From IMG/VR virus record IMGVR_UViG_3300044644_001125, positions 62,001 through 126,000 of that record: a stretch of 64,000 bases of DNA; one strand, given 5' to 3'. Positions within the stretch are counted from its first letter, which is position 1; each line of letters starts with the position of its first letter. The translations under genes were made by a program, and so were the position numbers. Below are positions 14,716-39,149 of the stretch, in pieces. The notes under the pieces are model-generated. The model ran no database searches. It was not told the DNA's origin and saw only the letters and a list, made by a program, of their open reading frames with translations.

Positions 14716-14883
14716 GGTTTGAATCCTGTAGTGCTTTTGTTAAGGTGGGTATAGTTTAACGGTTTGTTGCTACCATGTCAAATTTATTTTTGCATAACGC
14801 ATTATACGCGTATAGGCGTATATCATTACAGCGGGTAACGGGCGTTTTATGCTGATTTAACGCCCGTCACAGCTCGTTCGAGC

Positions 14884-15204
14884 TTAGATACCGTACTCGC
14901 GTATTGTGTACAATTCTGATTTTGTTTCGATTGCCTTGTAATCACCAAACGCAATGCTAGGATTAGCAAAGGATTCGCTGGCATCGTCATAAGCGGCTTT
15001 AGCACGTTCTACATTCGACCAAAATGACGATGATTCGAGTTTGATTGACGCGGTTACGATACCGTCTGTTTCACTGATTGCATCAGCATCATAGAACGAC
15101 CAATCGCCTAGATTAAAAGACAATTCTACATTGTCCCATAAATCAGCAGGTACTTCTACAACAAAGTTTACAACGTAGGTTAAGTTTTGATTATTCGCGT
15201 TCAT
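14884..15204 (-). CDS. Early hypothetical protein
   Basis: Start moved to MNANNQ after AGGA SD. Confidence 0.7.
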   Translation of the reverse strand: MNANNQNLTYVVNFVVEVPADLWDNVELSFNLGDWSFYDADAISETDGIVTASIKLESSSFWSNVERAKAAYDDASESFANPSIAFGDYKAIETKSELYTIREYGI

Positions 15205-15292
15205 GGTATGAATCCTATAAAGTGTAGTGAAAAGAGCAAGCCGTTTGACTTGGTGCATATTCTACACGAATTACACACCAAGTCAAATCTTT

Positions 15293-15586
15293 TTACGCTG
15301 GTAGGCGATAACGTGGAACGTCCGTGTATTCGCTTAGGACAGACCACCCATATTGCAGGACAGGCTCTTCACGTTCTGATACTTCGCCACTGTAGGCATT
15401 GGTAACGGTGGTAGACCAAACAGGCTCGAAAGCCTGCCATTTTGTCCATGCTTTTGCATAACCATTGTAGGCATAGGCACGTTGAAACCATGCGCCTGTA
15501 GCAGATAGCGCGACTTCTACGTTTACGCCAAAAGTGTTTGAGCCACCAAATGCGCGTACTGCTTTCACTGTTTTTGATGTTGCCAT
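15293..15586 (-). CDS. Early hypothetical protein
   Basis: Cassette promoter and GGAG SD. Confidence 0.75.
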   Translation of the reverse strand: MATSKTVKAVRAFGGSNTFGVNVEVALSATGAWFQRAYAYNGYAKAWTKWQAFEPVWSTTVTNAYSGEVSEREEPVLQYGWSVLSEYTDVPRYRLPA

Positions 15587-16020
15587 GATGTTTACTCCGT
15601 AGTGCTTTGTTAAGGTGGGTATATTCTAAAAGATAATTAAACTATTGTCAACCTCTAAATTCATATACGCGTATACACGTATAGGCGTGTATACTCACAG
15701 CGGGTACTGGTAGACTTCACGCCTACCAGCTCCCTCGGATTGGTTAACTATCGCTGTTGATGTATACCCATTCAGCGTATAACTCTTCTATTGTTGTGCC
15801 GTACTTCAATTCTAGTTTTTCTTCTTTGTTTAGTTTTTTCGCATACTCTTCGATTGTTTTGATTTCAGTTGGCACTGCGTATATTTTACCTTGGAATTCA
15901 ACAGATGTAGGTTTATTAGAATTGTCGTAGTGTAGGATTGGTTTCATTGTCTTGTTTCCTGTAGTGCTGTTTAGTGAGGTTATAGTCTAATGGATTATAA
16001 CCTCACTGTCAAATTTATTT

Positions 16021-16368
16021 TTAATCTAGTCTACTGCAAGCATAAGCGTCGATACCGTTATCGCGTAAGACTTTGGCGTATGCTTGTGCGCCTGCTTCGA
16101 GTGTATCCACGTTTTGAACGTGAAGTCTGCTAGGATTCCATAACTCAAAGCATTTTGAGGTATAACCTTTATCGAATCCTAGACTTTCCAATTGTTTACC
16201 TAGTTTGCTATTGGCACGAATGCGTTGTTCAATGCGAACCCAAGCGAAACCGCAGGCGAATCTATCAACACCACCTAGTTTGTTGATAAAGTATTCGCGT
16301 GCCGCAGTTTCAGCGGCTAATGATGCTTGTGTGTGGATTGCTGTTAAGTCTAAAGTTGTAGTAGTCAT
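16021..16368 (-). CDS. Early hypothetical protein
   Basis: CGFAWV...SRLD phage-type small protein; cassette promoter. Confidence 0.75.
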   Translation of the reverse strand: MTTTTLDLTAIHTQASLAAETAAREYFINKLGGVDRFACGFAWVRIEQRIRANSKLGKQLESLGFDKGYTSKCFELWNPSRLHVQNVDTLEAGAQAYAKVLRDNGIDAYACSRLD

Positions 16369-17024
16369 TTTAAATGTCCTGTAGTGCTGTTGTTTAGTGA
16401 GGTTATAGTCTAATGGATTATAACCTCGATGTCAAATTATTTTTATTCGAAAGATAAAGCAATCGTAATACCGTTTTTGGTAGCTTTGCCAGCAGTGCGT
16501 ACTTTGCTTTGTAATTGCATTGCTTGTGCTGTTTGGCTTGCTGTATAGCCACCACCGCAGACTTGTAGGCAGACTGCCGCGAGTGCATCGATTGGGTGTT
16601 GTGTTTTGAAGTTAGGTTTTTTAGTAACTGTGATGTAGGTTGTCATTGCTTTGTTTCCTGTAGTGCTTTGTTAAGGTGGTGATAGTTTAGTTGATAACTA
16701 TCACCTTGTCAACCATTATCTTTTAATTAAGTTTATAGTAATGTTCCACGGCTAACCCATTACCAGCACCGCAATCGAATAATTCGGTACGGCATGATAG
16801 TACATTATCTTTGAGTAATTCGTGAAACGCGGCGGTTATTTGCTTATCTAATTGAACCCATTTATTGAAATCAGTTCTGAATGCGTGATGATATTCTGCT
16901 AAAGTCCAGCAGAATTTTGACGCAGATACTTCTGTTTGTTTGGTTAATGCGTCAATGATTAGTGCTTTCATGGTGTTTACTCCGTAGTGCTTGTTAAGTT
17001 GGGTATAGTCTAAAAGATAATCGT

Positions 17025-17291
17025 TTAGCTGTCAACACTTTTATTTTGTCGTTCACGGCTTGCCATAGCCATCAGTGAGAAGTTGCTACATTTATCTTCC
17101 CAGCGTAGTAAATCCGCCACTGCGTAGCGTATGTGTTCTTTTTTGTACACTCTAATTTCTTGGTTTACCGCACCATTAGCAAATACTCTAACGTTCCAAC
17201 CTTTACCGATTCGTCTAACGGTGATTTCATGATGACACCAACCTAGACCTATTCGAGCTGGTGTTATGATTTGTTCTAATTTTATTTTCAT
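17025..17291 (-). CDS. Early hypothetical protein
   Basis: Cassette promoter and SD. Confidence 0.7.
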   Translation of the reverse strand: MKIKLEQIITPARIGLGWCHHEITVRRIGKGWNVRVFANGAVNQEIRVYKKEHIRYAVADLLRWEDKCSNFSLMAMASRERQNKSVDS

Positions 17292-17424
17292 AATGTTTAC
17301 TCCGTAGTGATGTTAAGTTGGGTACATTATAAAGGCGAATGTACCTAATGTCAACTCTATTTTTGCCTATACGTGCGTATATGGGTATAATGCGCGTATA
17401 GGCTTGCGTACTCACAGCGGGTAC

Positions 17425-17637
17425 TCAGTATCTGTGACGTCTTGCGTATCGTCTTTTATCGTAGTAGCCTCTGCGATAGTCGCCATATCGATAATGCGGG
17501 ACATAGTTATACTCTTTGAGGTATACTGGATGGCCCGGAATGTAGGTGGTGTCTGTTTCATAGATTGGATAGGTTGCCTCATAGACAGGGCCAGCAGTAC
17601 AACCAGTGAGCAATAAGATTAAGATATATTTTAGCAT
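17425..17637 (-). CDS. Small putative lipoprotein
   Basis: MLKYILILLLTGC lipobox. Confidence 0.55.
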   Translation of the reverse strand: MLKYILILLLTGCTAGPVYEATYPIYETDTTYIPGHPVYLKEYNYVPHYRYGDYRRGYYDKRRYARRHRY

Positions 17638-17904
17638 GATAGTCTGATGTGGTCGATGGTTTCGTGGACTGTTAAGGTTTCAGTAATTAAGTTAATCACG
17701 GTGCCGTTTTCCAGTGGTTTAAGTGATACGATGTATTTTGTGTTAATATAGATCGTTTCGTGTTGTTCGTTGGTAACTGGTAGTAGCATAAGGATCCTTT
17801 TGATTATGGCTCGTCACTAACGTGACTCGCTAGGTTATATGTGTATGTATATGTGTATAATTACCCGCGTGAATGGCGTACACTCACAGCGGGTAATGTG
17901 GATT

Positions 17905-18327
17905 CTAAAGTAAATCGTGGATATGGTAGCAATTTTGGTAGAAGTAAGGTAGTTTAGTTTTACCTACTGATTCGTTTTCTACACGAAACTCGTAGAAGTA
18001 ATCGTCATAATCGTCTGTGTTAGATTCTTTAGTTGGTTCGTACTCCCAGAATGTCACGATGCCGCTACCAGATACGGTTAGGTAGTTTGCCCATGATGGT
18101 GCTGGTGAGTCGGTTATATCGGCTAGTGCTAGTGGCAATTCGATGACTGTTGGTTTGGTCACAGGTGTGAATGATTCGCCTAGATACGTTGAACTTGACA
18201 TACTGAACACGTCATCACTGATAATCCATGTTTCACCGTAGTGTGCATTGACTTGATTGTCTTTGATGCTAATGAATAACGCGCCAGTTGGGATTGTGCT
18301 TGTGTCGATTACTTCGTATGCTTTCAT
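17905..18327 (-). CDS. Early hypothetical protein
   Basis: Cassette promoter and SD. Confidence 0.7.
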   Translation of the reverse strand: MKAYEVIDTSTIPTGALFISIKDNQVNAHYGETWIISDDVFSMSSSTYLGESFTPVTKPTVIELPLALADITDSPAPSWANYLTVSGSGIVTFWEYEPTKESNTDDYDDYFYEFRVENESVGKTKLPYFYQNCYHIHDLL

Positions 18328-18408
18328 GGTCTTTGCTCCGGTAGTGCTTGTTAAGTTGGGTATAGTTTAATCGTAAATTGACGAACTGTCAAGCATTATC
18401 TTTTAGAA

Positions 18409-18540
18409 AAAGAAAAACCTAACAGAGCACTACTTCTGTTAGGTTGTTTCAGTGGTGGTATACTAGGGTCACTACTCCCACATTGACCACCTTGTTACTG
18501 GGCGTTGGTTAGGTTTCCATGCCCAGTGGATTTGCACTAC
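18409..18540 (-). ncRNA. Candidate sRNA/3'-UTR RNA with AGUAGUG loops ending in a terminator
   Basis: Hairpin 18416-18445 (loop AGTAGTGC, U-tail); hairpin 18454-18491 (loop AGTAGTGA); further GTAGTGC at 18534-18540. Confidence 0.55.
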
Positions 18541-18987
18541 ACTTTGAATTTTGGGTTTGTTTTGCCAATGGTTGCCGCGCTTAGTAGCTGGATTGTTTTG
18601 TTGTCGAATCCGAGCTGTTTGGCTAGGTCTTTGACTGTTTCTTTTGGTTTAGTGGGTTTGTTCATTTGGCAGTGCCTATTTGTGTTTTAAGGGGTGTACA
18701 AGGCTCGCGCGTTGCGCTCGCGAGCCTAATGTTTATAAACCTTTTAATAACTGGTTTACTACTGGTTTTAAATCGTCTTGTAGGTTATCTAGTTCTAATT
18801 GGTATTCTAAACTTTCGCTGTATTGTTCTAAATCTCTTACTACATAGTCAAGTAATCTCATTCTACCTTCTAGGGTTAGGACTTCGTACATATCAATGGT
18901 AATTGGACTGTAGTTACTCATGGGTAGTGCCTCTTTGTTTTGTTAAGGTGGTGCTATTCTAAAAGATAATTAACGCACTGTCAAGTA

Positions 18988-19599
18988 TTATCTTTTAGTT
19001 AGAATCAATCTAATGTCTTTCTTTTCTGGGGTATAAGCCCAAACTCGTTGGTCGAAGTCGTAGTCTTCTTCACCGTGGTGTAGTTTAACATTGGTTTCTA
19101 GTATGGTGTTAGTTGCAATGTCTACGATGTCTACTTGGTATTCTTCTAGGTTGCTAAACATTTTCCAAAGTTTTCTCGCGCCATAGTATTGTTCTTCGCC
19201 ACCCATTAGCGTATAACCTGCGTCAATTAGGCTCATATAGCTACCTGATGCAATGCCACGTCCATATTGGTTATCGACAACCTTGACTGCTTTAACGCTT
19301 AGTATGTTACTATAGTGTTCAAAGTTTGGCATTTTTTCAAGGCTAATTTCACCAGATACTTTAAACTTATCCTTTATAGTTTTGTAGTTCTTATCGATGT
19401 CTTCAGCAAAGAACCCGACAACAAACTCATAAGAGTTGTTTAGTTGATAGCGTTCCATTACGCTATCAGTCGTGTTTACAGTTCCAACAAAGGTATATTT
19501 GCTTTTCATTACACCCATTGTTATATCTGAATAGGCTAGTTGGGTATTCCATTCACCGTATCGTGCGATTGACATTTCTGTTAAGTCTTTTATTCTCAT
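18988..19599 (-). CDS. GNAT-like acetyltransferase
   Basis: VKVVDNQYGRGIA acetyl-CoA motif, ARKLW; N-terminus MRIKDLTE. Confidence 0.6.
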   Translation of the reverse strand: MRIKDLTEMSIARYGEWNTQLAYSDITMGVMKSKYTFVGTVNTTDSVMERYQLNNSYEFVVGFFAEDIDKNYKTIKDKFKVSGEISLEKMPNFEHYSNILSVKAVKVVDNQYGRGIASGSYMSLIDAGYTLMGGEEQYYGARKLWKMFSNLEEYQVDIVDIATNTILETNVKLHHGEEDYDFDQRVWAYTPEKKDIRLILTKR

Positions 19600-20924
19600 G
19601 GTCGTTCTCTTGGTTACAAGGCTCGCCTACGGCTCGCAAGCCTTGTATTGAGTTATCTTTTAGTTATCTATCGCCAACTGCTTCGTTATGTAGTTGTTTA
19701 ATGCGTTCGTCTGTTTCGATGGCAAAGTAACTTTGTAAAATGCTTTTTAAGTATCCAACGTCTTCTAAACAGGTATCTAGTGCATCATCGACTAATTCGT
19801 CTATTAGTTGTTCAATATTCATGGGTAGTGCCTCTTTGTTTTGTTAAGGTGCGAGTAGTATATAACTACTCGCTGGGTTTGTCAATTGTTTTTTATTGGT
19901 CTTCTAGCATTAAGTCTTCAAGGTTTGTAACTAAGCCGTCAAAGTCTTCATCTGGGCCGAGTGTACTTGCGTAGAAGAAGACTGTTTCGCGGTCGATGCC
20001 GAAGTCATCTGCTAGGTTGTTCAAGTAGTCTTTGCGGTTTTTGTAACCTTCTTCAGTGTAAATGCTCATAGGTAGTGCCTCTTTGGTTATCTTGTAGCGG
20101 TATTGCTACAAGGTGGTTATATTCTAAAAGATAATTGATTTACTGTCAACTGTTTTATTGTACTGGTTTGCCATTTTCGTCATAGATACCAGTACGGTTG
20201 TGCATTTCGTCATAGTTGTCTAGGCATTCATTGATTTTGTCGTTGTTGCCTTTGTAGAGTGTTTTACAGAAACCCACTTGATAGCCTACTGTTGGTTCTA
20301 CTGCTCTATAGATAAAGTAAGCACTTGTTAAGGTGATTACTGATAATATGATTGATGTTATGATTTCTTTCATTGTTTTTCTCTGTTCGGTTAAGGTGGT
20401 GATAGTTTAATCGTTTATCACCACCGTGTCAAATCTTTTTTATGCGAAGTCTTTAACTAATTCTACTTCGGTTGCGTATGGGAAGAACTGCTCGAATAAC
20501 TCGTTTGCTTTGGTCGATGACTCTGCGTTGATTACCAAGGTTTCTTCAGTGCCGTACATACCAATGTAGTGGTATTGATATGGGAATAGTTCTTTCATTT
20601 GTAGTGCCTCTTGGTTTTGTTAAGGTGGGTACAGTATAGTTGTTCTGTACCCAGTTGTCAACTATTATTTTGATTGGCAGGTTGCCGCGTATCCGATTAA
20701 ACCTTCTTCTAGTGCGTGGTTTAATGCTGGTGTAATTTGTGCTTTGTAGGTTTCGCATTCAGCAGTGGTTGTGAAGTTACGCGCCACATTAGTTGGTGTG
20801 TCGTTGTTCATGTCAACTGGTGTGAAGTAAAGTGATACGAGTAAGATAATCATTTTGTTTGTCCTGTAGTGCTTTGTTAAGGTGGGTACATTGTATTCTC
20901 AATGTACCCAGTTGTCAACTCTTT

Positions 20925-21119
20925 TTATCCTATTGCTTGCACTAAGTATGCGTAGGTGATTTCTTTCTTCGTGCCTTTTGGTAATCCTAGTAGCTGGCAA
21001 GCTACTGTGTTTGCTGATTTTCCACGACCTTTCAATCCTTTGATTTCTAATCCAAGTGCTGATTTCAAGGTTAATAATTGGAATCTGCTGATTTGTTCTG
21101 GTGTAGTTAATGCGCTCAT
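20925..21119 (-). CDS. Small early protein (copy 1)
   Basis: Near-identical to 38032-38226. Confidence 0.8.
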   Translation of the reverse strand: MSALTTPEQISRFQLLTLKSALGLEIKGLKGRGKSANTVACQLLGLPKGTKKEITYAYLVQAIG

Positions 21120-22088
21120 CTTTGTATCTCCGGTAGTGCTTTGTTAAGGTGGGTATAGTTTAGTCGTTTATGCCTACATTGTCAACAACTTTCGTTAAAC
21201 AATCTACAGGATAATAACAACAGTCGCCAAAAGATACTGAATACGAGTACCACGTAGTCATTACACCGTCTATGAGGTTATTCCATTCGCTTTGCTTGGT
21301 ATTGACTACGTCACCAATGATAGGCTTTGAACCTCCTAAGTCTAGGCTAAGTGTTAAGCCTATCACTGAGTTGATGTCTGTTTTCATGCGATCTAGTACG
21401 TTCATGGTTTGTCCTTTGACAGCTCGCGCTAACGCGCTCGCATAATATAATCTTTAGTCTGCTGGTTTAACATGGATTATGTTTATATCACTACCGTGTT
21501 TATAATGTGCCATCTTTCTTGCGTTTTCTGCATCTGATATAGTAATATAGTCATACTGGGTAATGGTACGTTTAGTGAAGTTGTAATCGTACTTCTCGAA
21601 GTAGACTTCAAACTGGGTTAGTCCATCGGTTCTTCTACACATGGGTTGCCTCTATGTTGGATAGATAGTTGTGCCGTAGACTTCTACGGGTTCGAGTAGA
21701 ATAGTATCATACTCGACTGTCACTGTCAATAAGGCGACCAGTACTATTATTGCGATTGATTGTAGTATAATTATAGTTCGCATTGCTTATCTCTTGAACA
21801 GGTAATAACCGACAGCTAACATGACTAGGTATCCCGCGCCACCACTGCCAATGATTCCAGCAGTGCCAAAGATAAGCAATCCAACCATAACAAACCAGAA
21901 AGCAACCTTAATGAATAAGGTTAGCACTGTTGCGAATATAGATAGCATTATCAATGCAAAAATGATAGTGGCGGCTAGTTCGGGTGCGTTTTCCATTGGT
22001 TGCTCTCGTATGTGCGTATAGGTGTGTTATGTCACAGCGGGTAAAGAGGCTAAAAGATGATTGAGTTATCTTTTAGCCTTGTTGATAT

Positions 22089-22391
22089 TTACCCTTGTAG
22101 TTCTTCTAGGGTAACTCTGGTTACTCGTTCAATGATGAGTTGGTCTGGTGTAACCGCAGTGAGTTCGAGATACCAAGCGTCAAAATCTTCATCCTGTGTA
22201 AACGTTTTAACTGTTACTTCATCGGTATCTGAATCAAACTCGAATTCATCAACTAGGTGTGGGTATCCCTCGTGTTCTACTTTGATTTGAAAACCTGTGT
22301 TAAGGTTATAATACGTTACGGTTTCTTGCCATTCTGCTTGATTGGCTGTTAATACGTTTACTGCTGTTAATGCGTCTAGGTATGCTTTCAT
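22089..22391 (-). CDS. Early acidic hypothetical protein
   Basis: Cassette promoter and SD. Confidence 0.7.
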   Translation of the reverse strand: MKAYLDALTAVNVLTANQAEWQETVTYYNLNTGFQIKVEHEGYPHLVDEFEFDSDTDEVTVKTFTQDEDFDAWYLELTAVTPDQLIIERVTRVTLEELQG

Positions 22392-22461
22392 CTTGTTTAC
22401 TCCGGTAGTGCTTTGTTAAGGTGGTGATAGTTTATTTGAAAACTATCACCGTGTCAAGTTG

Positions 22462-23388
22462 TTAGTGTAATATTTTTGAACCTTTGGTTCTGTTACATCT
22501 CCAACATAATGTTTGTAAGTTACTTTCTACAGTAAAACCGCCTTTCGATAATGGTATAATATGGTCGATTTCTAATAGTAGATTCTTTTCATCATTAGTT
22601 GATAGATTACACATTTGGCAAGTATGGCTATCTCTGTTCTTTATCTTAGTTCTAAGTGCCGATGTCATCAATGCGCGTTGTCCAGCGATACTCTTTTTGA
22701 ATTTGATGTTATCATTCAAGTAAGCAATAAATCTGTTTAAGTTTGATATATCGAATTGAATGTCATTTTTCATAAAACTGTTACCACCAGCCGACACGTA
22801 TTGAAACGAATAAACTGGAAAATACAACTCGCTCAAGTCAACATAATTCAAACCCAACTTCTGTTTCAACAATTCTGAATCAAAACGCATAATCAATGGT
22901 GGTATGCAATTTGATATACTTGCAATAATCTCATCTCTTTCAGTGGTTAGTAATCTTTTACCCTCTTGAACCGACCCGTAATCATTTAACATACTTTCAA
23001 AGTTCGATAATGCGTCTTCATCAATTCCAATATTGAAATACTTACACAGGTACTTGAATGGTTGATTGTTTGAGTTTTTCAGCACAGAAGACGAACAGCG
23101 ATGAACAAATGTATTACTTTTTCTGATATTTGCCCAGTTTGGTCTTTTGAAATTATAATTGCTACTATCACGCAACGTACTTACACCCATATTGTTAGCT
23201 GGTATATGAACGTGAGATTGTTTTAACTTCTCTATGTACTCGTTTAATTCGTTGCAATTGTTAACATGATAATATACGGTATCGCGTATATTCAAGAAAA
23301 TCTGACTTTTAAAATATCTATTTCTATATACTACATATACAATCCACATCACACATAACAATCCAATCACAGCAATTGCCAATTTCAT
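22462..23388 (-). CDS. Membrane-anchored HNH endonuclease
   Basis: N-terminal TM helix; RD..TCQMC, EIDHIIP, NLQTLCWRCN. Confidence 0.85.
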   Translation of the reverse strand: MKLAIAVIGLLCVMWIVYVVYRNRYFKSQIFLNIRDTVYYHVNNCNELNEYIEKLKQSHVHIPANNMGVSTLRDSSNYNFKRPNWANIRKSNTFVHRCSSSVLKNSNNQPFKYLCKYFNIGIDEDALSNFESMLNDYGSVQEGKRLLTTERDEIIASISNCIPPLIMRFDSELLKQKLGLNYVDLSELYFPVYSFQYVSAGGNSFMKNDIQFDISNLNRFIAYLNDNIKFKKSIAGQRALMTSALRTKIKNRDSHTCQMCNLSTNDEKNLLLEIDHIIPLSKGGFTVESNLQTLCWRCNRTKGSKILH

Positions 23389-23461
23389 CTTGTTTACTCC
23401 GTAGTGCTTTGTTAAGGTGGGTACATTATAGTTGCAATGTACCCAGTTGTCAAGTTATCTT

Positions 23462-24979: not shown

Positions 24980-25321
24980 TGCTGTTTTCCTGTAGTGCTT
25001 TGTTAAGGTGCGAGTAGTATATAACTACTCGCTTTATATGTCAACAGTTTATCTCAAATGTTCTTCTAGTAATTTCAACTGTTTTTTAGATAGGTTAAGT
25101 TCAGCTAATACGTTTCTAAAAGATGATGTAAGATAACCTGTAACAAAGGCATAGTTCACCTCTCCTTTGTTAAAATCTGCCGATGCTTGTTCTGCTGTTG
25201 TTTTCATATGGTCGATTACTGTTTCTAATAGGATTGGGTTTGTCATCGTCTTTACTCCGGTAGTGCTTGTTAAGGTGGGTACAGTATAGTTGTTCTGTAC
25301 CCATTTGTCAACAGTTATCTT

Positions 25322-30209: not shown

Positions 30210-30710
30210 TTATATAATCATTGTTTTTGGTATTCTGTAAACAATACCACTTGCAACACCTAATAGCGGTTTAACGCTTACCACTTTCACTACTGCGACA
30301 TATGAATTCCTCAACTGGATAATGTCACCAATCATCAAGTTAGCGGCACGTTTGCGTGTTTTACTAGCATTTTCGTGAAACTTAACTACATTATCGCGCC
30401 ATTCTTGGCAAGTAACTGTTGCCTCTTTTAAAAACTTTAGTGGGCAGTTATATTGATAAGGGTGCATACTTTCACACATATCTTTGTAACCATAGCCTTT
30501 ATCGTTTTTAAAGTATTCAAGTCTGAATAGCAGAATAACCTTTTGACCTAACACATTGTTAGGATTATAATCAACGTCTTTTTGTGATACTGTGTACAAA
30601 CCCCATAGGTTATTGCCAACCAACGACCATTGAGTTATTGCATCATTGTCTAATTTAATTTGTCTAACTAATGCTTGTTTGCCAGTGTTGCTATAAGATA
30701 ACCAACCCAT
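30210..30710 (-). CDS. Conserved phage early protein (GYKDMCESMHP type)
   Basis: MGW..., GYKDM.E.M.P..Y.CP..., EWR motifs. Confidence 0.7.
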   Translation of the reverse strand: MGWLSYSNTGKQALVRQIKLDNDAITQWSLVGNNLWGLYTVSQKDVDYNPNNVLGQKVILLFRLEYFKNDKGYGYKDMCESMHPYQYNCPLKFLKEATVTCQEWRDNVVKFHENASKTRKRAANLMIGDIIQLRNSYVAVVKVVSVKPLLGVASGIVYRIPKTMII

Positions 30711-30789
30711 TGTCTTTACTCCGTAGTGCTTTGTTAAGGTGGGTACAGTATAGTTGTTCTGTACCCAGTTGTCAACTCTTTTTTTTCAA

Positions 30790-30901
30790 CTATCAGTAAG
30801 TAAGTCTACCATTATTAAGATTTAACGTATTAACGAAAAATGTACTGGCTCAAGCCTTGTATTGGGTGCTTGAGGACACCCGCAGACCCACTTACTGATA
30901 G
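30790..30901 (-). ncRNA. Candidate structured ncRNA in a cassette slot
   Basis: 20-bp closing stem (30790-30809 with 30882-30901, G-U on minus strand) and inner CTCAAGC/GCTTGAG hairpin; promoter at about 30935-30972 with no SD or ORF. Confidence 0.55.
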
Positions 30902-31658
30902 CTCTTAGGCTCGTGCCTATCGGCACTCGCTAAGTTGGGTACATTATCTTTTAGAATGTACCCATTGTCAAGTATTATTTTAAACTACCTTACCTACGAA
31001 AACGTAATTATGTCTACTCATATCAGCTAGATTACCAATCGAGTTAATCCAAAAAGGATCTGTATTTTGTGAATCAAGTATAACCTTATTGGCAACTTCT
31101 TCTAGGTGGTGTACCTTGTTTACTTGAGTTTTACCTAGTAAGATACTATTGTCTAAATTATCTTTTAGTGCTTTAGCCACTTGCGCTAAGTCACTTTCGT
31201 GTCTGGTAAAACTACCAGCAATGGATATTGGGTTTATGTTCATATTAGCACCTATCACTTTGATGTGGCAAACAATGCCGTAAATGCCCACAGCATACTC
31301 TTAATGCCGCGCCATTGAGCGGCGCGTATTGCTGTAATAGATACTGTGGTGACCTGTGTTCTTCGTATGGTGGTGGCATCATTACTGTTGGTGACATTTG
31401 GCAACCATACAAAGAAACTAAAAGTATATAGGCTATTTTACGCATGACTGAGTACCTAACAAAACAAAACCGAAACAGATTAACCCAAAGCCAACTGCTA
31501 TTGCAATAATTGCCGTTAACCACTGGCTAGTCATTAAACCTAAGTCACCAATCGAACCTAGTGCCATACCTGTTGCGATTGAAGTCATCGCTTTACTTAA
31601 ATTTGTCATAGAGTGCCTCGTGTGCGTAGGTGTACCCGCCTTCACAGCGGGTAATCTG

Positions 31659-32162
31659 TTAGTGTCTTGTTGCTGGCTTGATACCAAAGATGGTATACAT
31701 CCGTTCATCAAACTTATCTAAGATAACGTCTGGTAGGATTTCCATAAGTTCATCTATGATTTCTGCCTTGAGTTGTTCAACATCAATCATTTCAACTTCG
31801 GTTTGTTTAGTTGTAAACTCGTTCTCTTGGCTTAATTGCAAGAGTACCGTTTCAAGGTTATGCAATGTTTTATCCTGTCGAGTGGCAACTTCCCAAAAAC
31901 CAATTCGATTATAGATAAAGATATAATCAGCATTAGTTTCATCTAAAAGATGATTGAGTGTCTTGTGTATCTCACTTTCATCTAGGTCACCAGTATCATC
32001 CGTTATTTCTGCTCTATCTCCTATCAACATCAATTTAGAGATGTTACTTTGGTCGATGTTAGCTAAAAGATAACGTCCAACATCTTTTAGAGTTCCTTCG
32101 TGGATATAGACGGATTCAACGACACCACCTTCTCTTACCCATGCAACTGTACTACTAGGCAT
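31659..32162 (-). CDS. Diverged paralog of 25992-26402
   Basis: SVYIHEGTLKDVGRYL, LMLIGD, DYIFIY pattern. Confidence 0.6.
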   Translation of the reverse strand: MPSSTVAWVREGGVVESVYIHEGTLKDVGRYLLANIDQSNISKLMLIGDRAEITDDTGDLDESEIHKTLNHLLDETNADYIFIYNRIGFWEVATRQDKTLHNLETVLLQLSQENEFTTKQTEVEMIDVEQLKAEIIDELMEILPDVILDKFDERMYTIFGIKPATRH

Positions 32163-33738
32163 TTTCTACCTCTCTTGCGATTATATCTGCTATTGTTTCG
32201 TCAGTGGCTTTATAGATAAGCCAGTTACCAATCTGTACCTTATGCTTTGCGTTCATGTACTTTAAACCAAAGTTACCCTCAAAGATTCGTTGTTTAGCGG
32301 CTGGGATGATGATAACATCCTCGCCAATGTACAAGTGGGTTCTGTCGGTATTATCAGTCAACAACGCCTTAAAGGTTGTTTCACTGGTATGGTTATCAAC
32401 GTACTGTTGGAACAAATCCGCCATTGGACTTGTTACTACTTCTTCAAACTTCATGTTATCGTTCCTTGTTAGCTCACCGCTAACGCGGTTCGCACGTTAA
32501 CGGTGAAGTTGTTAGTTAAGCTGGGTTAAGTATCTGTAATCCGTAGATTAAATCTTCGTCTGTAATCTCATCGTATGAGAGTATGTATTGTTCGCCATCA
32601 TCAACTGTATGTACATGAATCATCTTATCCTCTGGTGATAAGCCATCAATCACATAATCAACGTCATCTTTTACAATTAAGAATGCTTGTTCGATTAAGG
32701 TATTAAGTTGTTCTCTTGTTCTCATTGGTAGTGCCTCTTTGTTAGTGTAGTGGTATGGTATCAATTATCTTTTAGGTTGTCAACTTATTTCTTACTGTCC
32801 ATTAAGTCTTGCATACCGTCTAAGTGGTAGATTCGATTCTTATGGAATACAAACCCACCTATGTTTGTAAAGTAAATTTTGCAGTAGTTAGTTGCAATGT
32901 CTTTTTGGAAGTGGGTGAATACTGCAATACCCGCAATCAACGCGCCAATCGCAATACCACTAACAAATGCTCTTAATCCCCTAAAGTTATCTGATACTTC
33001 TACTAATCTTGGTTTCTGTTCGTAAGTTGCCATCTGTAGTGCCTCTTTGTTAAGTTGTGGCTATTCTAAAAGATAATCGAACTGCTGTCAACAACTTTCT
33101 GTAACAAGGTTCTCATGTCTTGGCATTCGCTGTCATCTTCTTCTGAAAACTCATAACCAAACGCAATAATATATTCTAAGGCAGTTTTAATCAAGTCTAC
33201 TTCATTTGCGTCAAAGTTCATGTTACTGTACTCTATAGTTATGTTTAAGGTCAATGTCTGGTGTCAATGGCATTGGTTTAGCTTTCGTATCAGTTCTTGG
33301 TAAGTGGATTTGTTTATGGTTAACGATAACATACTCTACCGTAAACTTATCTGGGCAAATCTGATACAAGGTTTCACCACTGCAATGTACATGGTCATAG
33401 AATCCTGTTTCATCTGGGAAGTCTGGTACATCAATAACCGCGTGTGCATTGGTGGTAAAAATGGCTAGTGCTAGTAGTAATTTCTTCATTGTCTTTTCTC
33501 GATTGTTGCTATTGTTCCAACTAAGTTTTGTGCAAATGTTGCTTTGAATTCTTGGTTATTCAGTGAAGTTGTTTTAACCCATTCATCGATAAAGTAACTT
33601 ACTGGTGTTAACTTTCTTACTTGGGACTTAGCCACTCCTGTATGGGTTGCTAAGGTTTGTTCTATTGTGGTCATGTCGCTATCCTCTGTTAAGTTGCAGG
33701 TATCTTACCCTAAAATACCTGCATTTGTCAACAACTCG

Positions 33739-34197
33739 TTAGTAAAATTCCGGCATGAATTCTTCTTCAAAGTCATCGATAAAATCGAGTTCATTAAAGT
33801 CATTATCTGCAAACTGTTCCATGTCTACATCACTTGGTGTATAATTGCCTTTCTTTGCCGCTACATAGCTTGTAACTCTATCAACCAGTCTTTCCATTGG
33901 CTTGTCTAAGTTCTTCCCAGTGACGGTGCCTGTGTTGCATTCTAACTTGATGTCAAATAACACATCCGCCAAGCCTACTGAATATTTAATGTCGCAATCG
34001 AATAAGAAGTTTACCGCGCCACTGGTGTTAGATTTTAAACCGTTTTGATAGTAATCATAGTATACGCGTCCAATGGCTCTCATCATCTCACCTTCAACAC
34101 TTCCAGCATTACCTGCTTTTGGTACGATTTCTTTTAATGCGTTATATTCGTTTTGCATTTTGCCTAGATTGTTCCAGTATATGTTTTTCATTTTCAT
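33739..34197 (-). CDS. Conserved phage early protein
   Basis: YWN..GK.Q, GEMMRA...YYDYYQNG. Confidence 0.7.
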   Translation of the reverse strand: MKMKNIYWNNLGKMQNEYNALKEIVPKAGNAGSVEGEMMRAIGRVYYDYYQNGLKSNTSGAVNFLFDCDIKYSVGLADVLFDIKLECNTGTVTGKNLDKPMERLVDRVTSYVAAKKGNYTPSDVDMEQFADNDFNELDFIDDFEEEFMPEFY

Positions 34198-35573
34198 TTA
34201 CTCCGTAGTGCTTGTTAAGGTGGTGATAGTTTAATTGGAAACTATCACCGTGTCAAGTTATCTTTTAGTCTTCAGATTCTCTGCGGTCTAATTCAATGGC
34301 TAGTAACTCTTGCATAACTTCAGTAAAGGCATCTCTTGATTCTAATTCTGAATACAACTCAAACTTGAGTTCCAGTTCATCGTATGTCATTTCACTGATT
34401 TGGTTTTTGATTTCATTTATGTTCATTGGTAGTGCCTCTGGGTTGGTTAGGTTAGGCTCGCGCGTTGCGCTCGCGAGCCATGTATGTTGTTTAGATGATA
34501 CAATCGTTATCTGCATCAATTTCCAATGTTACGCATTCGGTGGAAATATCGTCACCATTATCAATCCATGCCAATCCAACACGATTTTTATCTATTGTGA
34601 ATTGTTCATCTGCGTATGCAACCGATACCACTACCGGTAAGTCTGCATCGAATGTGGATAATACTGCAATTAGTTCTTTGATTGTCATTATCTTTACTCC
34701 GTAGTGCTTGTTAAGGTGGTGATAGTTTAATTGGAAACTATCACCTTGTCAAGTTATCTTTTAGGTTAGGCTCGCGCGTTGCGCTCGCAAGCCTTGTATG
34801 TTTAGGTTGACACCTACTTGATTAGAGTAGTTAGAAGGTGCAGTTTCCTTCCATGCCAAGTATCACTTGCACTGCACCCTTATGTCATTATCTTTTAGGT
34901 TATTGGTCTTCGTATGCTCTGGCTAGTAACTCTGCCGTTTTAAAGATATGGTGAACTCTATCATCTTTTAGTGCGATTTCAAGAGCCTCCTCGTCATCAA
35001 TCGAGAAGTCATTGTCAAAGTGTTCTACCATGTACTCCTCGAAACTATCTGCCTCAGATTCTAGCAAGTAGTCTAAGATACTAGACAAACGGTTTAAGTT
35101 GGTTTCTGTTAAGGTGATTGTTCTGTATTGTTCGCTCATTGTCTATTACTCCGTAGTGCTTTGTTAAGGTGCGAGTAGTATATTACTACTCGCTAAGTTT
35201 GTCAACTTCTATTCATGGTACATTTTACCGTTAAATTCTACTGCTTGTGGTTCATCGTCAGAATCTGCCCAATCAGTCCAGTAAATCGCGTCATCCGCGT
35301 AAGCATCTTCGTAAGTGGCATATCCAGCCGCAATACTCCATTCAACTGCATCTTTGATATTCTTAAAGTATTGGTCTGCCTCGCTGGTAACCCATCCTGC
35401 GTTCATACCTTCACCAGTGATTGAACAAACTCGCATCCAAGTTTTAAATTCTGTAGTCATTGTCTTTACTCCGTAGTGCTTTGTTAAGGTGCGAGTAGTA
35501 TATTACTACTCGCTTTAAATGTCAACTATTTTTTTCTTCGTACTGGCTCGTGCCTATCGGCACTCGCAGAAAT

Positions 35574-35867
35574 TTAATCGATGGTTCTAACTGCTCTGAC
35601 GTATCCGTCACCGTAACTCTTACCGTAGTAACTCTGAATCCCGATTGACATATGATTACTCCATGCGTTGACATCATTATACTCAGTAGATGACCAGTAG
35701 TAATCTTCCTCAAACTCATTTTCCGATTCATAAATCTGCGTTAGTTCGTCTGTGGTTGGTAAACGCCATCCTGTTTTCTCGTTGATATTAAGCGAAAAGC
35801 AGTATTGGCTGGCATCATACCAGTTGGCTTGAATCTCTGTTTCTTTTGGTGCGATTTCAATGTTCAT
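35574..35867 (-). CDS. Mini DUF1566/C-lectin-fold protein
   Basis: W.DA..YC...GWRLPT..EL...YWSSTE...VRAVR. Confidence 0.8.
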   Translation of the reverse strand: MNIEIAPKETEIQANWYDASQYCFSLNINEKTGWRLPTTDELTQIYESENEFEEDYYWSSTEYNDVNAWSNHMSIGIQSYYGKSYGDGYVRAVRTID

Positions 35868-35941
35868 ATCTTTTACTCCGTAGTGCTTGTTAAGGTGGGT
35901 ACATTCTAGTTGAAATATACCCAGTTGTCAACTATTTGTTT

Positions 35942-36202
35942 TTAGATTATTCTGGTTTGTTTTATTACTGCACATTCGATTCTATCTGCTGAAATTTCTT
36001 CACCAAACTCGCCATCCGTGCCTTTGAATAGTACAGTGCTACCAGCTACTTCAACTAAAGCAACCTCGACCACTTCGCCACAATCTTTAACATATATTTG
36101 ATAGTCTTTGGCAACCTCGTAATCGATTGAATCCGCATAATCCGAGTATTCTACCAAGTATGGCATGATTTCAGCTAAGGTGGTTTCTGTCATTGTGTAC
36201 AT
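35942..36202 (-). CDS. Early protein (paralog A)
   Basis: MYTMTETT...IECAV shared with 36916-37179. Confidence 0.75.
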   Translation of the reverse strand: MYTMTETTLAEIMPYLVEYSDYADSIDYEVAKDYQIYVKDCGEVVEVALVEVAGSTVLFKGTDGEFGEEISADRIECAVIKQTRII

Positions 36203-36915
36203 GGATATTCTCCGTAGTGCTTTGTTAAGGTGGGTATATTCTAGTTGAAATATACCCAGTTGTCAAGTTATCTTTTAGGTTAAATCGTGTTCTAATTTAG
36301 GGTATGTTGCGCGTAAGGTTTCAATCTTTGCTATTAAGGCAGTTATATCTGCTACTATCTCGTCCCTAGCAGTGACTTCACTCTCTGTCAGTGACTTTAA
36401 GTAATCAGTGTCATAGATGTCAAACATAGCTTTAATGTCACGTCTGTATGACTGTACCATGCTATAAAGGTCTGACCGTTTTTGAATGCCGTTCCAGTAT
36501 AAACTACTCATTGGCTTTACTCCGTAGTGCTTTGATAAGGTGGTGATAGTTTAATTGAAAACTATCACATTGTCAATCTTTTTTACCCGTGAGTTAGTTC
36601 TGCCTCAGCATCTTCTAGTGCATCAGCGACTTCTTCTTTAAAGTTGATATTATGACAATCACAGTAACGAATAATATCTACTAACAAATCTGCTACGGTT
36701 GTTTCATAACCATAATCTTCTAATTTTAATATTGCCGCAATCTTTTCAACACCAGTGTAAAAAGAAAACTTTTTAAATACTTCTTCTCCTTCTGGCATTT
36801 CCTGTAGTTCTGCTAACACAAGTTTAATCGAATTGTTCATGTTGTTTACTCCGTAGTGCTTTGTTAAGGTGGGTATATTCTAGTTGAAATATACCCAGTT
36901 GTCAACTATTTGTTT

Positions 36916-37179
36916 TTAGATTAGTCTGTTTTGTTTCATTACAGCGCATTCAATACTATTGACTTTGGCAGTACCGCATTTACCACCACCAATGTTTCTG
37001 AATGTCACGCTATCACCTAAGACTTCTACTGTTCCTACTTCTACCACATCACCAAACTCTTTTACATAGAGTTGAATATGACGTGCTGGTTCGTATTGGA
37101 AGAATCCATTGTCCTCCTCGTCAAACAATTCCAAGTAAGGTAATAAATCAGCAAAGGTGGTTTCTGTCATTGTGTACAT
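36916..37179 (-). CDS. Early protein (paralog B)
   Basis: Paralog of 35942-36202. Confidence 0.75.
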   Translation of the reverse strand: MYTMTETTFADLLPYLELFDEEDNGFFQYEPARHIQLYVKEFGDVVEVGTVEVLGDSVTFRNIGGGKCGTAKVNSIECAVMKQNRLI

Positions 37180-37246
37180 GGATATTCTCCGTAGTGCTTT
37201 GTTAAGGTGGGTACATTCTAAAAGAAAATACCCACCATGTCAATCT

Positions 37247-37960
37247 TTATTTTGTGCGAATAACGAATCCGCTAGTATCTTTTTTCGCGCGTCCTTTGGC
37301 TTTCAATCCAATAACCAAGTCTAGGTTAGTATTATTGAATCTTAAGTCATCCAAGTCACCATCAACTACAGGAACACCATTCCAAGTGGCGGGTACTTCA
37401 TCGAATACCACTGCAATAGAGTAACCTTGTTCCAATGCTTTCATTACGTCTGCATCGTTTGATTCTGCTCTACTGAATGTTAAATGGTAGTTACCTAGGT
37501 GCTTAACCTTACGATTAAGAATCTTACTGTAGTCGTAGAATTGTACTGTAGGGAAGTGTTCAAACACGTTCTTACCACCAACGTAAATGTTTTCCCATAG
37601 AATGTCACTTGTACCATTTAAACGGAATACAGGTGTCATACCTTTACGCTCTGCTTGTTTAATGGCTTTTGTTATATCAGTGATTAAGGTTTCCATGAAA
37701 ACCTCTCTGTTTGTTTTAAAGAACACGGTTCTACGTTTACGAGCCTCTTGTACCGCGTTAGTGGTTTCACCTGCTTTAAACATACCACCATGTCCAGCAG
37801 TATTCAAACAAGCCGCTCTGCATCCAGCAGTAGCCTTTGGGCAAGTGTTCATTACACCAGATAAGTCACTTGGTGCTAGGTGAAGAATGTAGGATTTATA
37901 ACCTTGTGATTCACCTTTAATGATTTTAAGGTTTGAAGTAGTGAGAAGTGAAAATGCCAT
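37247..37960 (-). CDS. Gp88-like Fe-S protein
   Basis: CPKATAGCRAACL, RLNGTSD, QFYDYSK, YHLTFS, GDLDDLRF, GLKAKG. Confidence 0.75.
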   Translation of the reverse strand: MAFSLLTTSNLKIIKGESQGYKSYILHLAPSDLSGVMNTCPKATAGCRAACLNTAGHGGMFKAGETTNAVQEARKRRTVFFKTNREVFMETLITDITKAIKQAERKGMTPVFRLNGTSDILWENIYVGGKNVFEHFPTVQFYDYSKILNRKVKHLGNYHLTFSRAESNDADVMKALEQGYSIAVVFDEVPATWNGVPVVDGDLDDLRFNNTNLDLVIGLKAKGRAKKDTSGFVIRTK

Positions 37961-38031
37961 TGTAGTAACTCCGTAGTGCTTTGTTAAGGTGGGTACATTG
38001 TATTCTCAATGTACCCATTTGTCAAATCTTT

Positions 38032-38226
38032 TTATCCGATTGCTTGTAACAAGTACGCGTATGTGATTTCTTTCTTCGTTCCTTTTGGTAAACCTAGCAA
38101 CTGGCAAGCCATTGTATTAGCCGATTTTCCACGACCTTTCAATCCTTTGATTTCTAATCCAAGTGCTGATTTCAAGGTTAATAACTGGAATCTGTTGATT
38201 TGTTCTGGTGTAGTTAATACGCTCAT
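38032..38226 (-). CDS. Small early protein (copy 2)
   Basis: Near-identical to 20925-21119. Confidence 0.8.
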   Translation of the reverse strand: MSVLTTPEQINRFQLLTLKSALGLEIKGLKGRGKSANTMACQLLGLPKGTKKEITYAYLLQAIG

Positions 38227-39149
38227 CTTTGTAACTCCGTAGTGCTTTGTTAAGGTGGGTATAGTTTAGTGGATCTTTACCCTGTTGTCAACTCTTTTTT
38301 TTCTTCTTATTGGCTCGTGCCTATCGGCACTCGCAAACAAGTGGGTACATCCTACTCGAAAATACCCACCTTGTCAAATCTTCTTTTAGTGTGATGCAAT
38401 TATCGAATCATTGGACAATGAAAACCAATAACCACGTCGCTTATAGTCTGCAATGATTGCAAAGGCCTCCTCCTCTGGCATAGCTTGCAGCTCGTCCAAG
38501 TCTAGTTTAATCGAATCATTACGTGGTTTTGTGCCTAGTATAAATGTCGGTTCGTTCATTTTGTTTGCTCCTGTATGTTTATGTTTCGGCGTATAGCCTA
38601 CCAGTAGTTAGCCGAGTTGTCAACAACCCACTAACTCATCATACAGTTCTTGGTAAACACTGCCTTGGTATGCACCATCATCAAAGTCCATGACAGCACA
38701 TCTCTCAATAAAATCCAGATTGGATTCACCCTCATATTGCTCGTACAGCACAGAATACTTCTCATAAGCCTCTGGGATTTGTTTAACTTTCTCAATATAT
38801 GAATCTATCATCGTAGTATCCTCTTGGGTTTAAGTTGGCATTAGTCTACCAAGTTACTGGTTACTTGTCAACTCTGTATACCAAACTCCCTATCAATCCA
38901 CTCCTGCTCATCTGGATACACATAAGTGAAGATGACTTCCCCATCTTTTAGGGATCTCAAATCCTCCATGAAGTCATGGGGATACAGGATGTCTGCGCCT
39001 TCAGGCAGAACTGATGAGTCGATGATGGTTACGCCAGTTGCTGTTGTTGCTTGTAAGTAGTTTGCCATGCGGTTTCTCTGGGTTGTGGTTATTTGTGGGT
39101 ACAGTCTAAAAGATAATTAACCCAATGTCAAGCATTATCTTTTAGGCAT

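What the first reader, a model, noticed from the sequence alone, without database searches (positions are those of the whole stretch)
14720..38300. Cassette-like early region: one promoter-leader repeat per gene
Seen: about 45 near-identical 60-70 bp intergenic modules (TTGACA, -10, ACCTTAACAAAGCACTACGGAG) separate small, mostly unrelated ORFs, all on one strand. Established: this resembles the PeSL promoter/stem-loop cassettes described in T4-type phages that shuffle accessory genes by recombination. Inference: this is a plug-in platform for host-takeover and anti-defence genes, and the number of consensus promoters could also titrate host RNA polymerase.
Basis: partly seen in the sequence, partly recalled or inferred. 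Interest (0 to 1): 0.65.

Follow-up and report, generated by a model that had tools for sequence, protein, structure and literature searches.

The report
Promoter-hairpin-leader gene cassette array
A 25-kb stretch of an uncultivated 327-kb freshwater phage is an array of about 50 near-identical "stop-promoter-hairpin-leader" units, one in front of almost every small gene. Related phages in other lakes have gained, lost, swapped and reordered the genes at these units, as in the PeSL cassettes of T4-type phages.

Summary
On the minus strand of window 13,981-39,145 there are 46 profile-detected modules (50 by promoter pattern). None occurs elsewhere in the 327-kb genome apart from marginal hits.

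Each module holds the upstream stop codon in an A-rich tract, TTGACA, a 17-nt spacer, a TAnnnT -10, a 6-nt discriminator, a roughly 30-nt unstructured leader with a GGAG ribosome-binding site, and ATG. About 40 of 50 also carry a 7-16 bp hairpin that encloses the -10 or the -35.

This is the published anatomy of PeSLs (promoter-early stem-loops). The phage has a T4-type capsid gene, no RNA polymerase of its own that I could detect, and no integrase.

In a 91-98% identical relative and in 25 lake-metagenome contigs, gene content differs cassette by cassette. About half of the deletions are seamless in-register module-to-module joins. Crossover points vary within the module, which fits homologous rather than site-specific recombination.

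Not shown: cargo function (57 of 64 ORFs have no Pfam hit and none is a known anti-defence family), early timing, hairpin function, excision circles and RNA polymerase titration.

Verdict: a new, unusually regular member of a known kind.

The parts
13981..39145 (-). The whole cassette array: about 50 modules and 64 small ORFs (43-311 aa) plus one tRNA, all co-oriented
36841..36920 (-). Exemplar module: upstream stop codon in an A-rich tract; -35 TTGACA at 36905-36900; 17-nt spacer; -10 TAGAAT at 36882-36877; discriminator at 36876-36871; predicted +1 at 36870; 30-nt leader with GGAG; ATG at 36840. An 11-bp hairpin pairs the spacer with the -10/discriminator.
24629..24668 (-). Exemplar of the second hairpin type: 16-bp arms (upstream A-rich tract against the spacer) enclosing the -35; dG -20 kcal/mol
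27856..27931 (-). tRNA-Met (CAT) carried as a cassette behind its own module promoter (-35 at 27968). It is cleanly absent in several relatives.
37970..38270 (-). Duplicated cassette (module, 64-aa ORF, next module), copy 1
   Evidence: 92.4% identical over 303 nt to copy 2; homology starts and ends inside the flanking modules
20862..21164 (-). Duplicated cassette, copy 2, 17 kb away in the same array
22151..25995 (-). 3.8-kb block of 7-8 cassettes, including the HNH endonuclease ORF 22462-23388. It is present in the window and absent in relatives L005 and L026.
   Evidence: run X3 joint 22460->26396
16679..17311 (-). Two cassettes deleted in L005 by a seamless in-register join between modules 17354 and 16712 (offsets 43 and 33, 11-nt overlap)
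15686..15942 (-). Slot where the window has a 67-aa ORF and L005 has an unrelated 100-aa ORF behind the same module
26474..27409 (-). CoiA_N/DUF5710 311-aa ORF. It is replaced by an unrelated 220-aa ORF in L005 and deleted in L008, L013, L024 and runs X2 and X3. It follows one of only two canonical terminators in the array (27494-27514).
38313..38334 (-). 22-nt structured motif behind an ORF-less module promoter (-35 at 38377). Further copies lie at 35546-35567 and 30909-30930.
54480..54810 (-). Two outlying, weakly module-like consensus promoters upstream of the array (-35 at 54806 and 54547)

Best explanation
The block is the hyperplastic early region of a T4-superfamily jumbo phage. Nearly every intergenic gap is filled by one copy of a portable expression module of about 80 nt of the PeSL type.

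Shown by sequence: each module supplies the upstream stop codon in an A-rich tract, a near-consensus sigma70 promoter with an exact 17-nt spacer, a constant-length unstructured CA-rich leader of about 30 nt, a GGAG ribosome-binding site and the start codon. Most modules also have a hairpin whose 3' arm ends at the predicted +1.

Inferred: host RNA polymerase fires every module immediately after infection, so each small gene is expressed on its own. The hairpin exists only in RNA that reads through from the gene upstream. There it would attenuate or insulate transcription, or protect the upstream mRNA's 3' end.

Shown by comparison: because the modules are alike, general homologous recombination between them deletes, duplicates, replaces and reorders whole ORFs without breaking expression signals. 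The phage encodes a RecA/UvsX-like protein that could carry this out. The natural population therefore carries an open pool of cassettes.
For: - Module anatomy, count and restriction to this block.
- Hairpins: 35 of 51 modules have a perfect stem of at least 7 bp around the -10, against 10% in shuffles. Mean dG is -12.8 kcal/mol and z is -3.6, while the leader from +1 to +45 is unstructured at -1.9.
- The two arms stay linked across at least 7 different stem sequences, while the upstream tract, hairpin class and leader type reassort freely.
- Phage type and enzymes: T4-type Gp23 capsid gene at E=3e-96; no RNA polymerase beta subunit and no sigma70 region 2 with working controls; RecA-like gene present; no tyrosine or serine recombinase with working controls.
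- Relative L005 (91-98% identity): 10 indels or replacements in 17 kb of array against about 7 in 55 kb outside it. On the window side 8 of 10 have a breakpoint in a module (18% coverage, permutation P=0.001); counting the L005 side as well, all 10 do.
- 15-16 of 29 deletions seen in relatives are in-register module-to-module joins. Their crossover intervals differ (offsets -1..6, 33..43, 66).
- The same junctions recur in independent assemblies and in runs X2 and X3.
- Other events: an intra-array cassette duplication bounded by modules, a permuted cassette order in L013 and L031, novel ORFs at the same slots with no homologue anywhere in this genome, and 20 of 58 module-led ORF clusters found only in relatives.
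- A 63%-identity relative has a looser promoter array at the same locus that shares two cassette ORFs.
Against: - There are no expression data. Early timing, the transcription start and promoter strength are inferred from consensus in an unknown host.
- The hairpins have no U-tract, and terminator-like sites are not enriched (16 found against 13.2 expected), so a terminator role rests on analogy with RB49.
- In a compact array any surviving whole-gene indel must break in an intergenic module, so part of the breakpoint enrichment could be survivorship.
- Short-read metagenome assemblies can mis-join at repeats. Against this, the longest exact match between two modules is 61 nt, shorter than typical reads, and junctions recur across samples.
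- About half of the deletions are not in register.
- Circles were not demonstrated.
- Orthologous modules are not much more conserved than the ORFs.
Confidence: 0.78

Rival explanations
1. The modules are only expression signals kept alike by selection for strong early expression. They play no causal part in shuffling, and indels merely survive when they fall between genes.
For: All intergenic space here is module, so whole-gene indels must break there. About half of the deletions are not in register. Orthologous modules evolve about as fast as the ORFs.
Against: 15-16 seamless in-register hybrid modules. A duplication whose homology begins and ends inside modules. Free reassortment of module sub-parts. 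Indel density about 4 times that of the flanks.
Confidence: 0.12
2. An integron-like system: the hairpins are attC-like sites cut by a dedicated site-specific recombinase, and cassettes move as circles.
For: Co-oriented cassettes, an imperfect palindrome at each junction, and an open cassette pool.
Against: No tyrosine or serine recombinase in a 92%-complete genome, with positive controls. Crossover intervals do not share a common point. The hairpin register and sequence vary between classes. Every cassette has its own promoter.
Confidence: 0.03
3. The apparent cassette variation is an artefact of metagenome assemblers mis-joining at the repeats.
For: In-register joins at repeats are what chimeras look like. 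Identity levels change across some junctions. Logan k=31 contigs break at every module.
Against: The longest exact inter-module match is 61 nt. The same junctions appear in independent samples and assemblies. Relatives hold novel ORFs that are absent from the whole reference genome. Contigs L014, L017 and L018 reproduce the window's order across 9 modules at 99.96-100% identity.
Confidence: 0.04
4. The main role of the array is to act as a sink that titrates host RNA polymerase or sigma70.
For: 50 near-consensus promoters in 25 kb. RB49 PeSL promoters are so strong that they are hard to clone (PMC2839356).
Against: Nothing was tested. Each promoter is precisely coupled to a leader, a ribosome-binding site and an ORF, which argues for expression rather than decoy. 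One infecting genome offers only 50 sites.
Confidence: 0.03

Closest known systems
PeSLs (promoter-early stem-loops) of T4-like phages RB49/phi1, T4/PST and KVP40/nt-1 (Arbiol et al. 2010, PMC2839356; Comeau et al. 2014, PMC4122927)
   Same: - The layout matches: stop codon in an AT-rich tract, near-consensus sigma70 promoter with N17 spacer, stem-loop between the boxes or overlapping the -10 or -35, ribosome-binding site and start codon.
- There are about 50 copies per genome, concentrated in a hyperplastic region in front of ORFans.
- Differences between close relatives map to the motifs.
- There is no dedicated recombinase.
   Different: - The host phage is a 327-kb uncultivated freshwater jumbo phage. 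Its helicase is only about 50% identical to the PA5oct and Atu_ph07 group, so it is not a classical T4-like phage.
- All copies sit in one contiguous co-oriented array rather than in several regions.
- The roughly 30-nt leader is conserved almost letter for letter, whereas the phi1/RB49 PeSLs were aligned mainly on their promoter and Shine-Dalgarno sequences.
- The stems are mixed sequences in several classes, not G-tract/C-tract.
- Promoter activity, terminator activity and mini-circles are unproven here.
Integron gene-cassette arrays
   Same: Co-oriented single-gene cassettes separated by structured repeats. The cassette pool is open, and gain, loss and reordering happen at the repeats.
   Different: No integrase. 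There are no attC-type sites and no fixed crossover point. Each cassette brings its own promoter instead of sharing one Pc.
Host-takeover module of Bacillus phage SPO1, and the early regions of T4 and T5 (from my own knowledge, not checked here)
   Same: Clusters of many small early genes, each with a strong host-type promoter and a strong ribosome-binding site.
   Different: Those promoters are not embedded in a near-identical 80-nt repeat that fills the whole intergenic gap, and cassette shuffling at them has not been described as it has for PeSLs.

Membership tests
PeSL regulatory cassettes | Near-consensus sigma70 -35/-10 with a 17-nt spacer | tested here: met
   50 sites of TTGAC[AT]-N17-TAnnnT; 21 match at least 11 of 12 consensus positions
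PeSL regulatory cassettes | AT-rich tract upstream of the -35 that contains the upstream gene's stop codon | tested here: met
   The -35 starts 3-10 nt after the stop codon; the stop lies in a recurring A-rich word or a poly-A run
PeSL regulatory cassettes | Stable stem-loop between the boxes or overlapping the -35 or -10 | tested here: met
   40 of 51 modules have a stem of at least 7 bp around the -10 or at least 8 bp around the -35; 39 of 49 fold with z<-2
PeSL regulatory cassettes | Shine-Dalgarno sequence and start codon at the 3' end | tested here: met
   GGAG (or AGGA/GAGG) lies 6-9 nt before the ATG; leader length is 28-31 nt in most modules
PeSL regulatory cassettes | Concentrated in a hyperplastic region, in front of ORFans | tested here: met
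   All copies lie in one 25-kb block. 57 of 64 ORFs have no Pfam hit. Indel density is about 4 times that of the flanks.
PeSL regulatory cassettes | Indels and replacements between close relatives have their breakpoints at the motifs | tested here: met
   (permutation P=0.001; 15-16 in-register joins)
PeSL regulatory cassettes | Measured promoter and terminator activity | not testable with these tools
The pattern scan shows no canonical terminators at the modules.
PeSL regulatory cassettes | Mini-circles formed by exchange between neighbouring motifs | tested here: inconclusive
   'Goes back' joints exist in runs X1 and X2, but with only 31-41 nt on one side, inside the repeat
PeSL regulatory cassettes | The host phage is a T4-type myovirus that uses host RNA polymerase for early genes | tested here: met
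   Gp23-type capsid gene at E=3e-96. No RNA polymerase beta subunit or sigma. However, it is only a distant member of the superfamily.
Integron | IntI-type tyrosine recombinase next to the array | tested here: not met
   PF00589 and PF00239 are absent from the whole genome, while the controls ring
Integron | Single fixed crossover point in the repeat | tested here: not met
   Crossover intervals at offsets -1..6, 33..43 and 66 do not intersect

The most novel reading that the evidence does not exclude
The 80-nt unit acts as a complete, recombinase-free "plug" that makes any ORF, or even a tRNA, expressible and exchangeable. Its letter-perfect 5' leader could also be a common handle through which one phage factor switches off the whole set of about 50 early genes at once. 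That factor might be a RegA-like repressor or a RegB-like nuclease acting at GGAG. The hairpin that ends exactly at +1 would mark or process read-through RNA so that both kinds of transcript share the same leader.
Probability: 0.2. Interest if true: 0.65.

Novelty: new member of a known kind. Interest (0 to 1): 0.45.

Why it matters
- It extends the PeSL mechanism, so far described in cultured T4-like phages, to an uncultivated freshwater jumbo phage that is only distantly related to them.
- Natural-population data support the model: many lakes, recurring junctions, about 20 extra cassettes in fragments alone.
- The array is the most regular example I know of. It could serve as a natural catalogue of insulated strong expression units and as a defined place to look for new early (takeover or counter-defence) genes once a host is found.
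- It also warns annotators and assemblers that such arrays fragment short-read assemblies.

Tried and rejected
- **Close cultured relatives:** megablast against the phage collection found none.
- **Spread of the leader:** as a 16-mer in IMG/VR it gave only the same lineage plus single chance hits. It has no match in prokaryote genomes, so there is no host clue.
- **Rfam:** only the tRNA matched. Neither the module nor the 22-nt motif matched a known RNA family.
- **Canonical terminators:** not enriched at the modules.
- **RegB and AsiA homologues:** none found, but the controls did not ring, so this is uninformative. The T7-like RNA polymerase search was uninformative for the same reason.
- **Which strand folds:** among interior single mismatches in the stems, G.T outnumbers A.C by 5 to 1. 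That is too few to decide between RNA and DNA structure. A first cruder count was confounded by base composition.
- **Reads:** the Logan contigs (k=31) end in every module, so their joints cannot prove circles. The metatranscriptome run X23 has contigs on 22.9-25.2 kb but cannot show transcription starts or exclude DNA carry-over.
- **Atlas look-ups of two unknown cassettes:** these gave only weak leads, DUF6927 and a widespread phage hypothetical family that may be GNAT-like.
- **N4-type hairpin promoters:** rejected because of the exact TTGACA-N17 geometry and the variable loop sizes of 3-10 nt.
- **Palindromic operator for a repressor:** rejected because the arms co-vary across unrelated sequences.
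- **Tools and limits:** the large protein searches, structure prediction and complex prediction were not needed. No other genetic code was used.
Full report
**1. Where the window lies**

The window is bases 62,001-126,000 of a single 327,256-bp virus record that CheckV rates 92% complete. It has about 38% G+C. It encodes a T4-type Gp23 major capsid protein (PF07068, E=3e-96), a DnaG-like primase and a DnaB-like helicase.

The helicase's best cultured matches are about 50% identical. They are Pseudomonas phage PA5oct, Agrobacterium phage Atu_ph07, Xanthomonas XaC1, Salicola SCTP-2 and Serratia BF. No cultured phage matches at the DNA level. All DNA relatives come from lake or freshwater metagenomes. 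This is therefore an uncultivated freshwater jumbo phage in the broad T4 superfamily.

I found no RNA polymerase beta subunit and no sigma70 region 2, with working controls. I found no tyrosine or serine recombinase, also with working controls. A RecA/UvsX-like gene is present.

**2. The observation**

A profile built from 31 copies finds 46 copies at E<1e-3 in the whole genome. All lie between window 14,788 and 39,141 on the minus strand, plus four weaker ones there and one marginal hit elsewhere.

A strict promoter pattern (TTGAC[AT], 17 nt, TAnnnT) gives 50 sites in the block. Genome-wide there are 91 TTGACA-N17-TAnnnT sites against about 3 per strand expected. Fifty lie in this 25 kb, and a looser second cluster without the leader lies at genome 130-150 kb.

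"About 45 near-identical modules, one strand, one per gene" is therefore correct, with these refinements:
- The strand is minus, and the array ends at 39,131.
- About 33 modules have the full leader and about 15 a variant one.
- 48 of 64 ORFs have their own module.

**3. Anatomy of a module**

Reading the minus strand, each module contains in order:
- the stop codon of the upstream ORF, embedded in a recurring A-rich word or a poly-A run;
- 3-10 nt further on, TTGACA;
- a spacer of exactly 17 nt;
- a -10 of the form TAnAaT;
- a 6-nt discriminator;
- an A that I take as +1 (inference from the usual 7-nt distance);
- the leader, which ends in GGAG;
- 6-9 nt later, ATG.

The leader is 28-31 nt long in most modules. 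The first 45 transcribed bases are essentially unstructured (mean dG -1.9 kcal/mol). The whole intergenic gap is thus one unit, and only the ORF varies.

One "ORF" is a tRNA-Met behind its own module promoter. Two module promoters (-35 at 38377 and 30971) have no ORF; a 22-nt structured motif follows them instead.

**4. Hairpins**

- 35 of 51 modules have a perfect stem of 7-13 bp that pairs the spacer with the end of the -10 plus the discriminator. Shuffled spacers give this in 10% of cases.
- Five more have 9-16 bp arms that pair the upstream A-rich word with the spacer and enclose the -35.
- RNAfold gives a mean of -12.8 kcal/mol and z=-3.6; 39 of 49 modules have z<-2.
- There are at least seven unrelated stem sequences, and the two arms always change together. 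The upstream tract, hairpin class and leader type otherwise combine freely. This argues for a nucleic-acid structure rather than a protein operator.
- The register and loop size differ between classes (3, 6 and 10 nt), but the 3' arm always ends at offset 33-39 from the -35, which is at the predicted +1.
- The promoter's own transcript therefore lacks the hairpin. Only RNA reading through from upstream, or single-stranded or extruded DNA, can form it.
- No U-tract follows the stem, and terminator-like sites are not enriched (16 found against 13.2 expected). Only two canonical terminators lie in the array on the minus strand.

**5. Cargo**

Only 7 of the 64 ORFs have a Pfam family: DUF7227, GP88, an HNH endonuclease, Lcl_C, CoiA_N with DUF5710, and DUF1281_C. 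PHROG hits are to families of unknown function or to HNH endonucleases. No known anti-defence or takeover family was seen, and two Atlas look-ups gave only weak leads.

There are only four paralogous pairs, so the array is not a tandem gene family. Only 2 of the 64 ORFs have homologues in 700 kb of helicase-neighbourhood loci from relatives with 55-67% helicase identity.

**6. The decisive comparison**

*A close relative.* An IMG/VR contig of 71.8 kb (G001; its first 20 kb is L005) is 91-98% identical to the window and starts inside the array. Over 17 kb of array it differs from the window by 10 indels or replacements. The 55 kb outside the array holds about 7.

On the window side, 8 of the 10 events have a breakpoint inside a module. 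Modules cover 18% of the block, and the permutation P is 0.001. Counting the L005 side as well, all 10 do. Examples:
- A 631-nt deletion joins modules 17354 and 16712 at the same offset.
- A 3.8-kb block of 7-8 cassettes is present only in the window.
- An extra 85-aa cassette with its own module is present only in L005.
- Unrelated ORFs (67 aa in the window, 100 aa in L005) occupy the same slot behind the same module.
- The novel L005 ORFs have no homologue anywhere in this genome.

*Metagenome contigs.* Twenty-five metagenome contigs at 75-100% identity add many more arrangements. Of 29 deletions relative to the window, 15-16 are seamless in-register module-to-module joins.

Their crossover intervals fall at different places in the module (offsets -1..6, 33..43, about 66). 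No single cut site fits all of them. Together with the absence of an integrase, this points to homologous recombination.

*Other events.*
- One lineage has three cassettes in a permuted order with unchanged orientation (L013, L031).
- Within the window itself, one cassette with both flanking modules is duplicated 17 kb apart (92% identity).
- Clustering all module-led ORFs gives 58 families, 20 of them absent from the window.

*A more distant relative.* A relative with 63% helicase identity (G004/L072) has five strong promoters about 500 bp apart at the same locus. Their leaders are looser but related, two cassette ORFs are shared, and the contig ends inside the array. A 347-kb relative with 57% identity has its consensus promoters dispersed. 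The array locus is therefore older than the extreme homogeneity of the modules.

**7. Caveats**

- *Mis-assembly.* Metagenome assemblers can mis-join at repeats, and a mis-join would look like an in-register deletion. Four points argue against this as the main cause:
  - The longest exact match between two modules is 61 nt, shorter than ordinary reads and large k-mers.
  - The same junctions recur in independent samples. Examples are 25995>25329 in L007 and L019, 25995>22151 in L005 and L026, 24583>23872 in L010 and L016, and 26453>27466 in three contigs and in runs X2 and X3.
  - Novel ORFs cannot be chimeras of the reference.
  - Three contigs reproduce the window's own order across 9 modules at 99.96-100% identity.
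- *Survivorship.* Because all intergenic space is module, survivorship of whole-gene indels explains part of the breakpoint enrichment. It does not explain the seamless hybrid modules.
- *Reads.* Laying reads gave only Logan contigs (k=31). These end in every module, so their "skip" and "go back" joints have 27-41 nt on one side and cannot prove circles. A lake metatranscriptome has contigs on 22.9-25.2 kb, but that shows neither transcription starts nor absence of DNA carry-over.
- *Conservation.* Orthologous modules are only slightly more conserved than the ORFs. Conservation is concentrated in the boxes and the leader.

**8. Comparison with what is known**

Arbiol et al. 2010 (PMC2839356) define PeSLs as follows: an upstream stop codon in an AT-rich tract; a near-consensus sigma70 promoter; and a stem-loop placed between the boxes, overlapping the -10 or -35, or beside them. 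A Shine-Dalgarno sequence and a start codon close the motif.

RB49 and phi1 have about 50 PeSLs per genome. They are concentrated in hyperplastic regions in front of ORFans and lie at the breakpoints between the two phages. Promoter and terminator activity were measured, and mini-circles were shown by inverse PCR.

Comeau et al. 2014 (PMC4122927) extend them to T4/PST and to the 245-kb KVP40/nt-1 pair, with lineage-specific stems and box consensus.

Every sequence-level and comparative feature is met here. The functional assays cannot be done with these tools. The differences are:
- The phage lineage is distant from the classical T4-like phages.
- There is one contiguous array rather than several regions.
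- The leader is almost invariant.
- The stems fall into several mixed-sequence classes.
- One cassette is a tRNA.

I therefore file this as a new, unusually regular member of a known kind.

**9.

"Plug-in platform" is supported. "Host-takeover and anti-defence genes" is a reasonable guess from position and size, but nothing here shows it. "Titrates RNA polymerase" is untested. I consider it unlikely as a main role, because each promoter is precisely coupled to translation signals and an ORF.

Noticed in passing
window 5984-7822 (+), insert about 6520-6961: The DnaB-like helicase carries a HINT/intein-like segment (Pfam PT-HINT and Intein_splicing at residues 251-322). The close relative G001 lacks about 440 nt there. 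This is probably a mini-intein that is present in one phage and absent in the other.
   Followed up: partly
window 35574-35867 (-) and genome about 109k, 149-151k, 230-240k, 308-325k: The 97-aa Lcl_C (PF07603) cassette ORF has 67 tblastn paralogue hits elsewhere in the 327-kb genome, a large expansion of a small-protein family.
   Followed up: partly
window 38313-38334, 35546-35567, 30909-30930 (-); also 44853 (+) and two sites outside the window: A 22-nt motif (a 5-bp stem with a GATA loop, flanked by possible G.A pairs) occurs 6 times in the genome. Two copies directly follow module promoters that have no ORF, so it may be a small RNA or a binding site. It has no Rfam match.
   Followed up: partly
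window 27856-27931 (-): The tRNA-Met (CAT) has its own module promoter and is cleanly missing, promoter included, in contigs L012, L013, L015 and L024. A tRNA is behaving as a cassette.
   Followed up: yes
window 43771-44373 and 44901-45605 (-): Two phage-encoded AraC-type helix-turn-helix proteins lie just upstream of the array. They are candidates for regulators of the next transcription class.
   Followed up: no
window 48336-48821 (-), 62137-63444 (+), 22462-23388 (-): GIY-YIG and HNH homing-endonuclease-like genes are scattered through the region. The HNH gene inside the array has an N-terminal hydrophobic segment.
   Followed up: no
genome 130-150 kb (beyond the window's end), minus strand: A second, looser cluster of 11 consensus sigma70 promoters lacks the conserved leader. 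It may be another early region.
   Followed up: no
L072 15300-18628 (contig IMGVR_UViG_3300033182_000769): A relative with 63% helicase identity has an analogous promoter array at the same locus, with its own leader consensus. Its contig ends inside the array, which suggests such arrays commonly break assemblies.
   Followed up: partly
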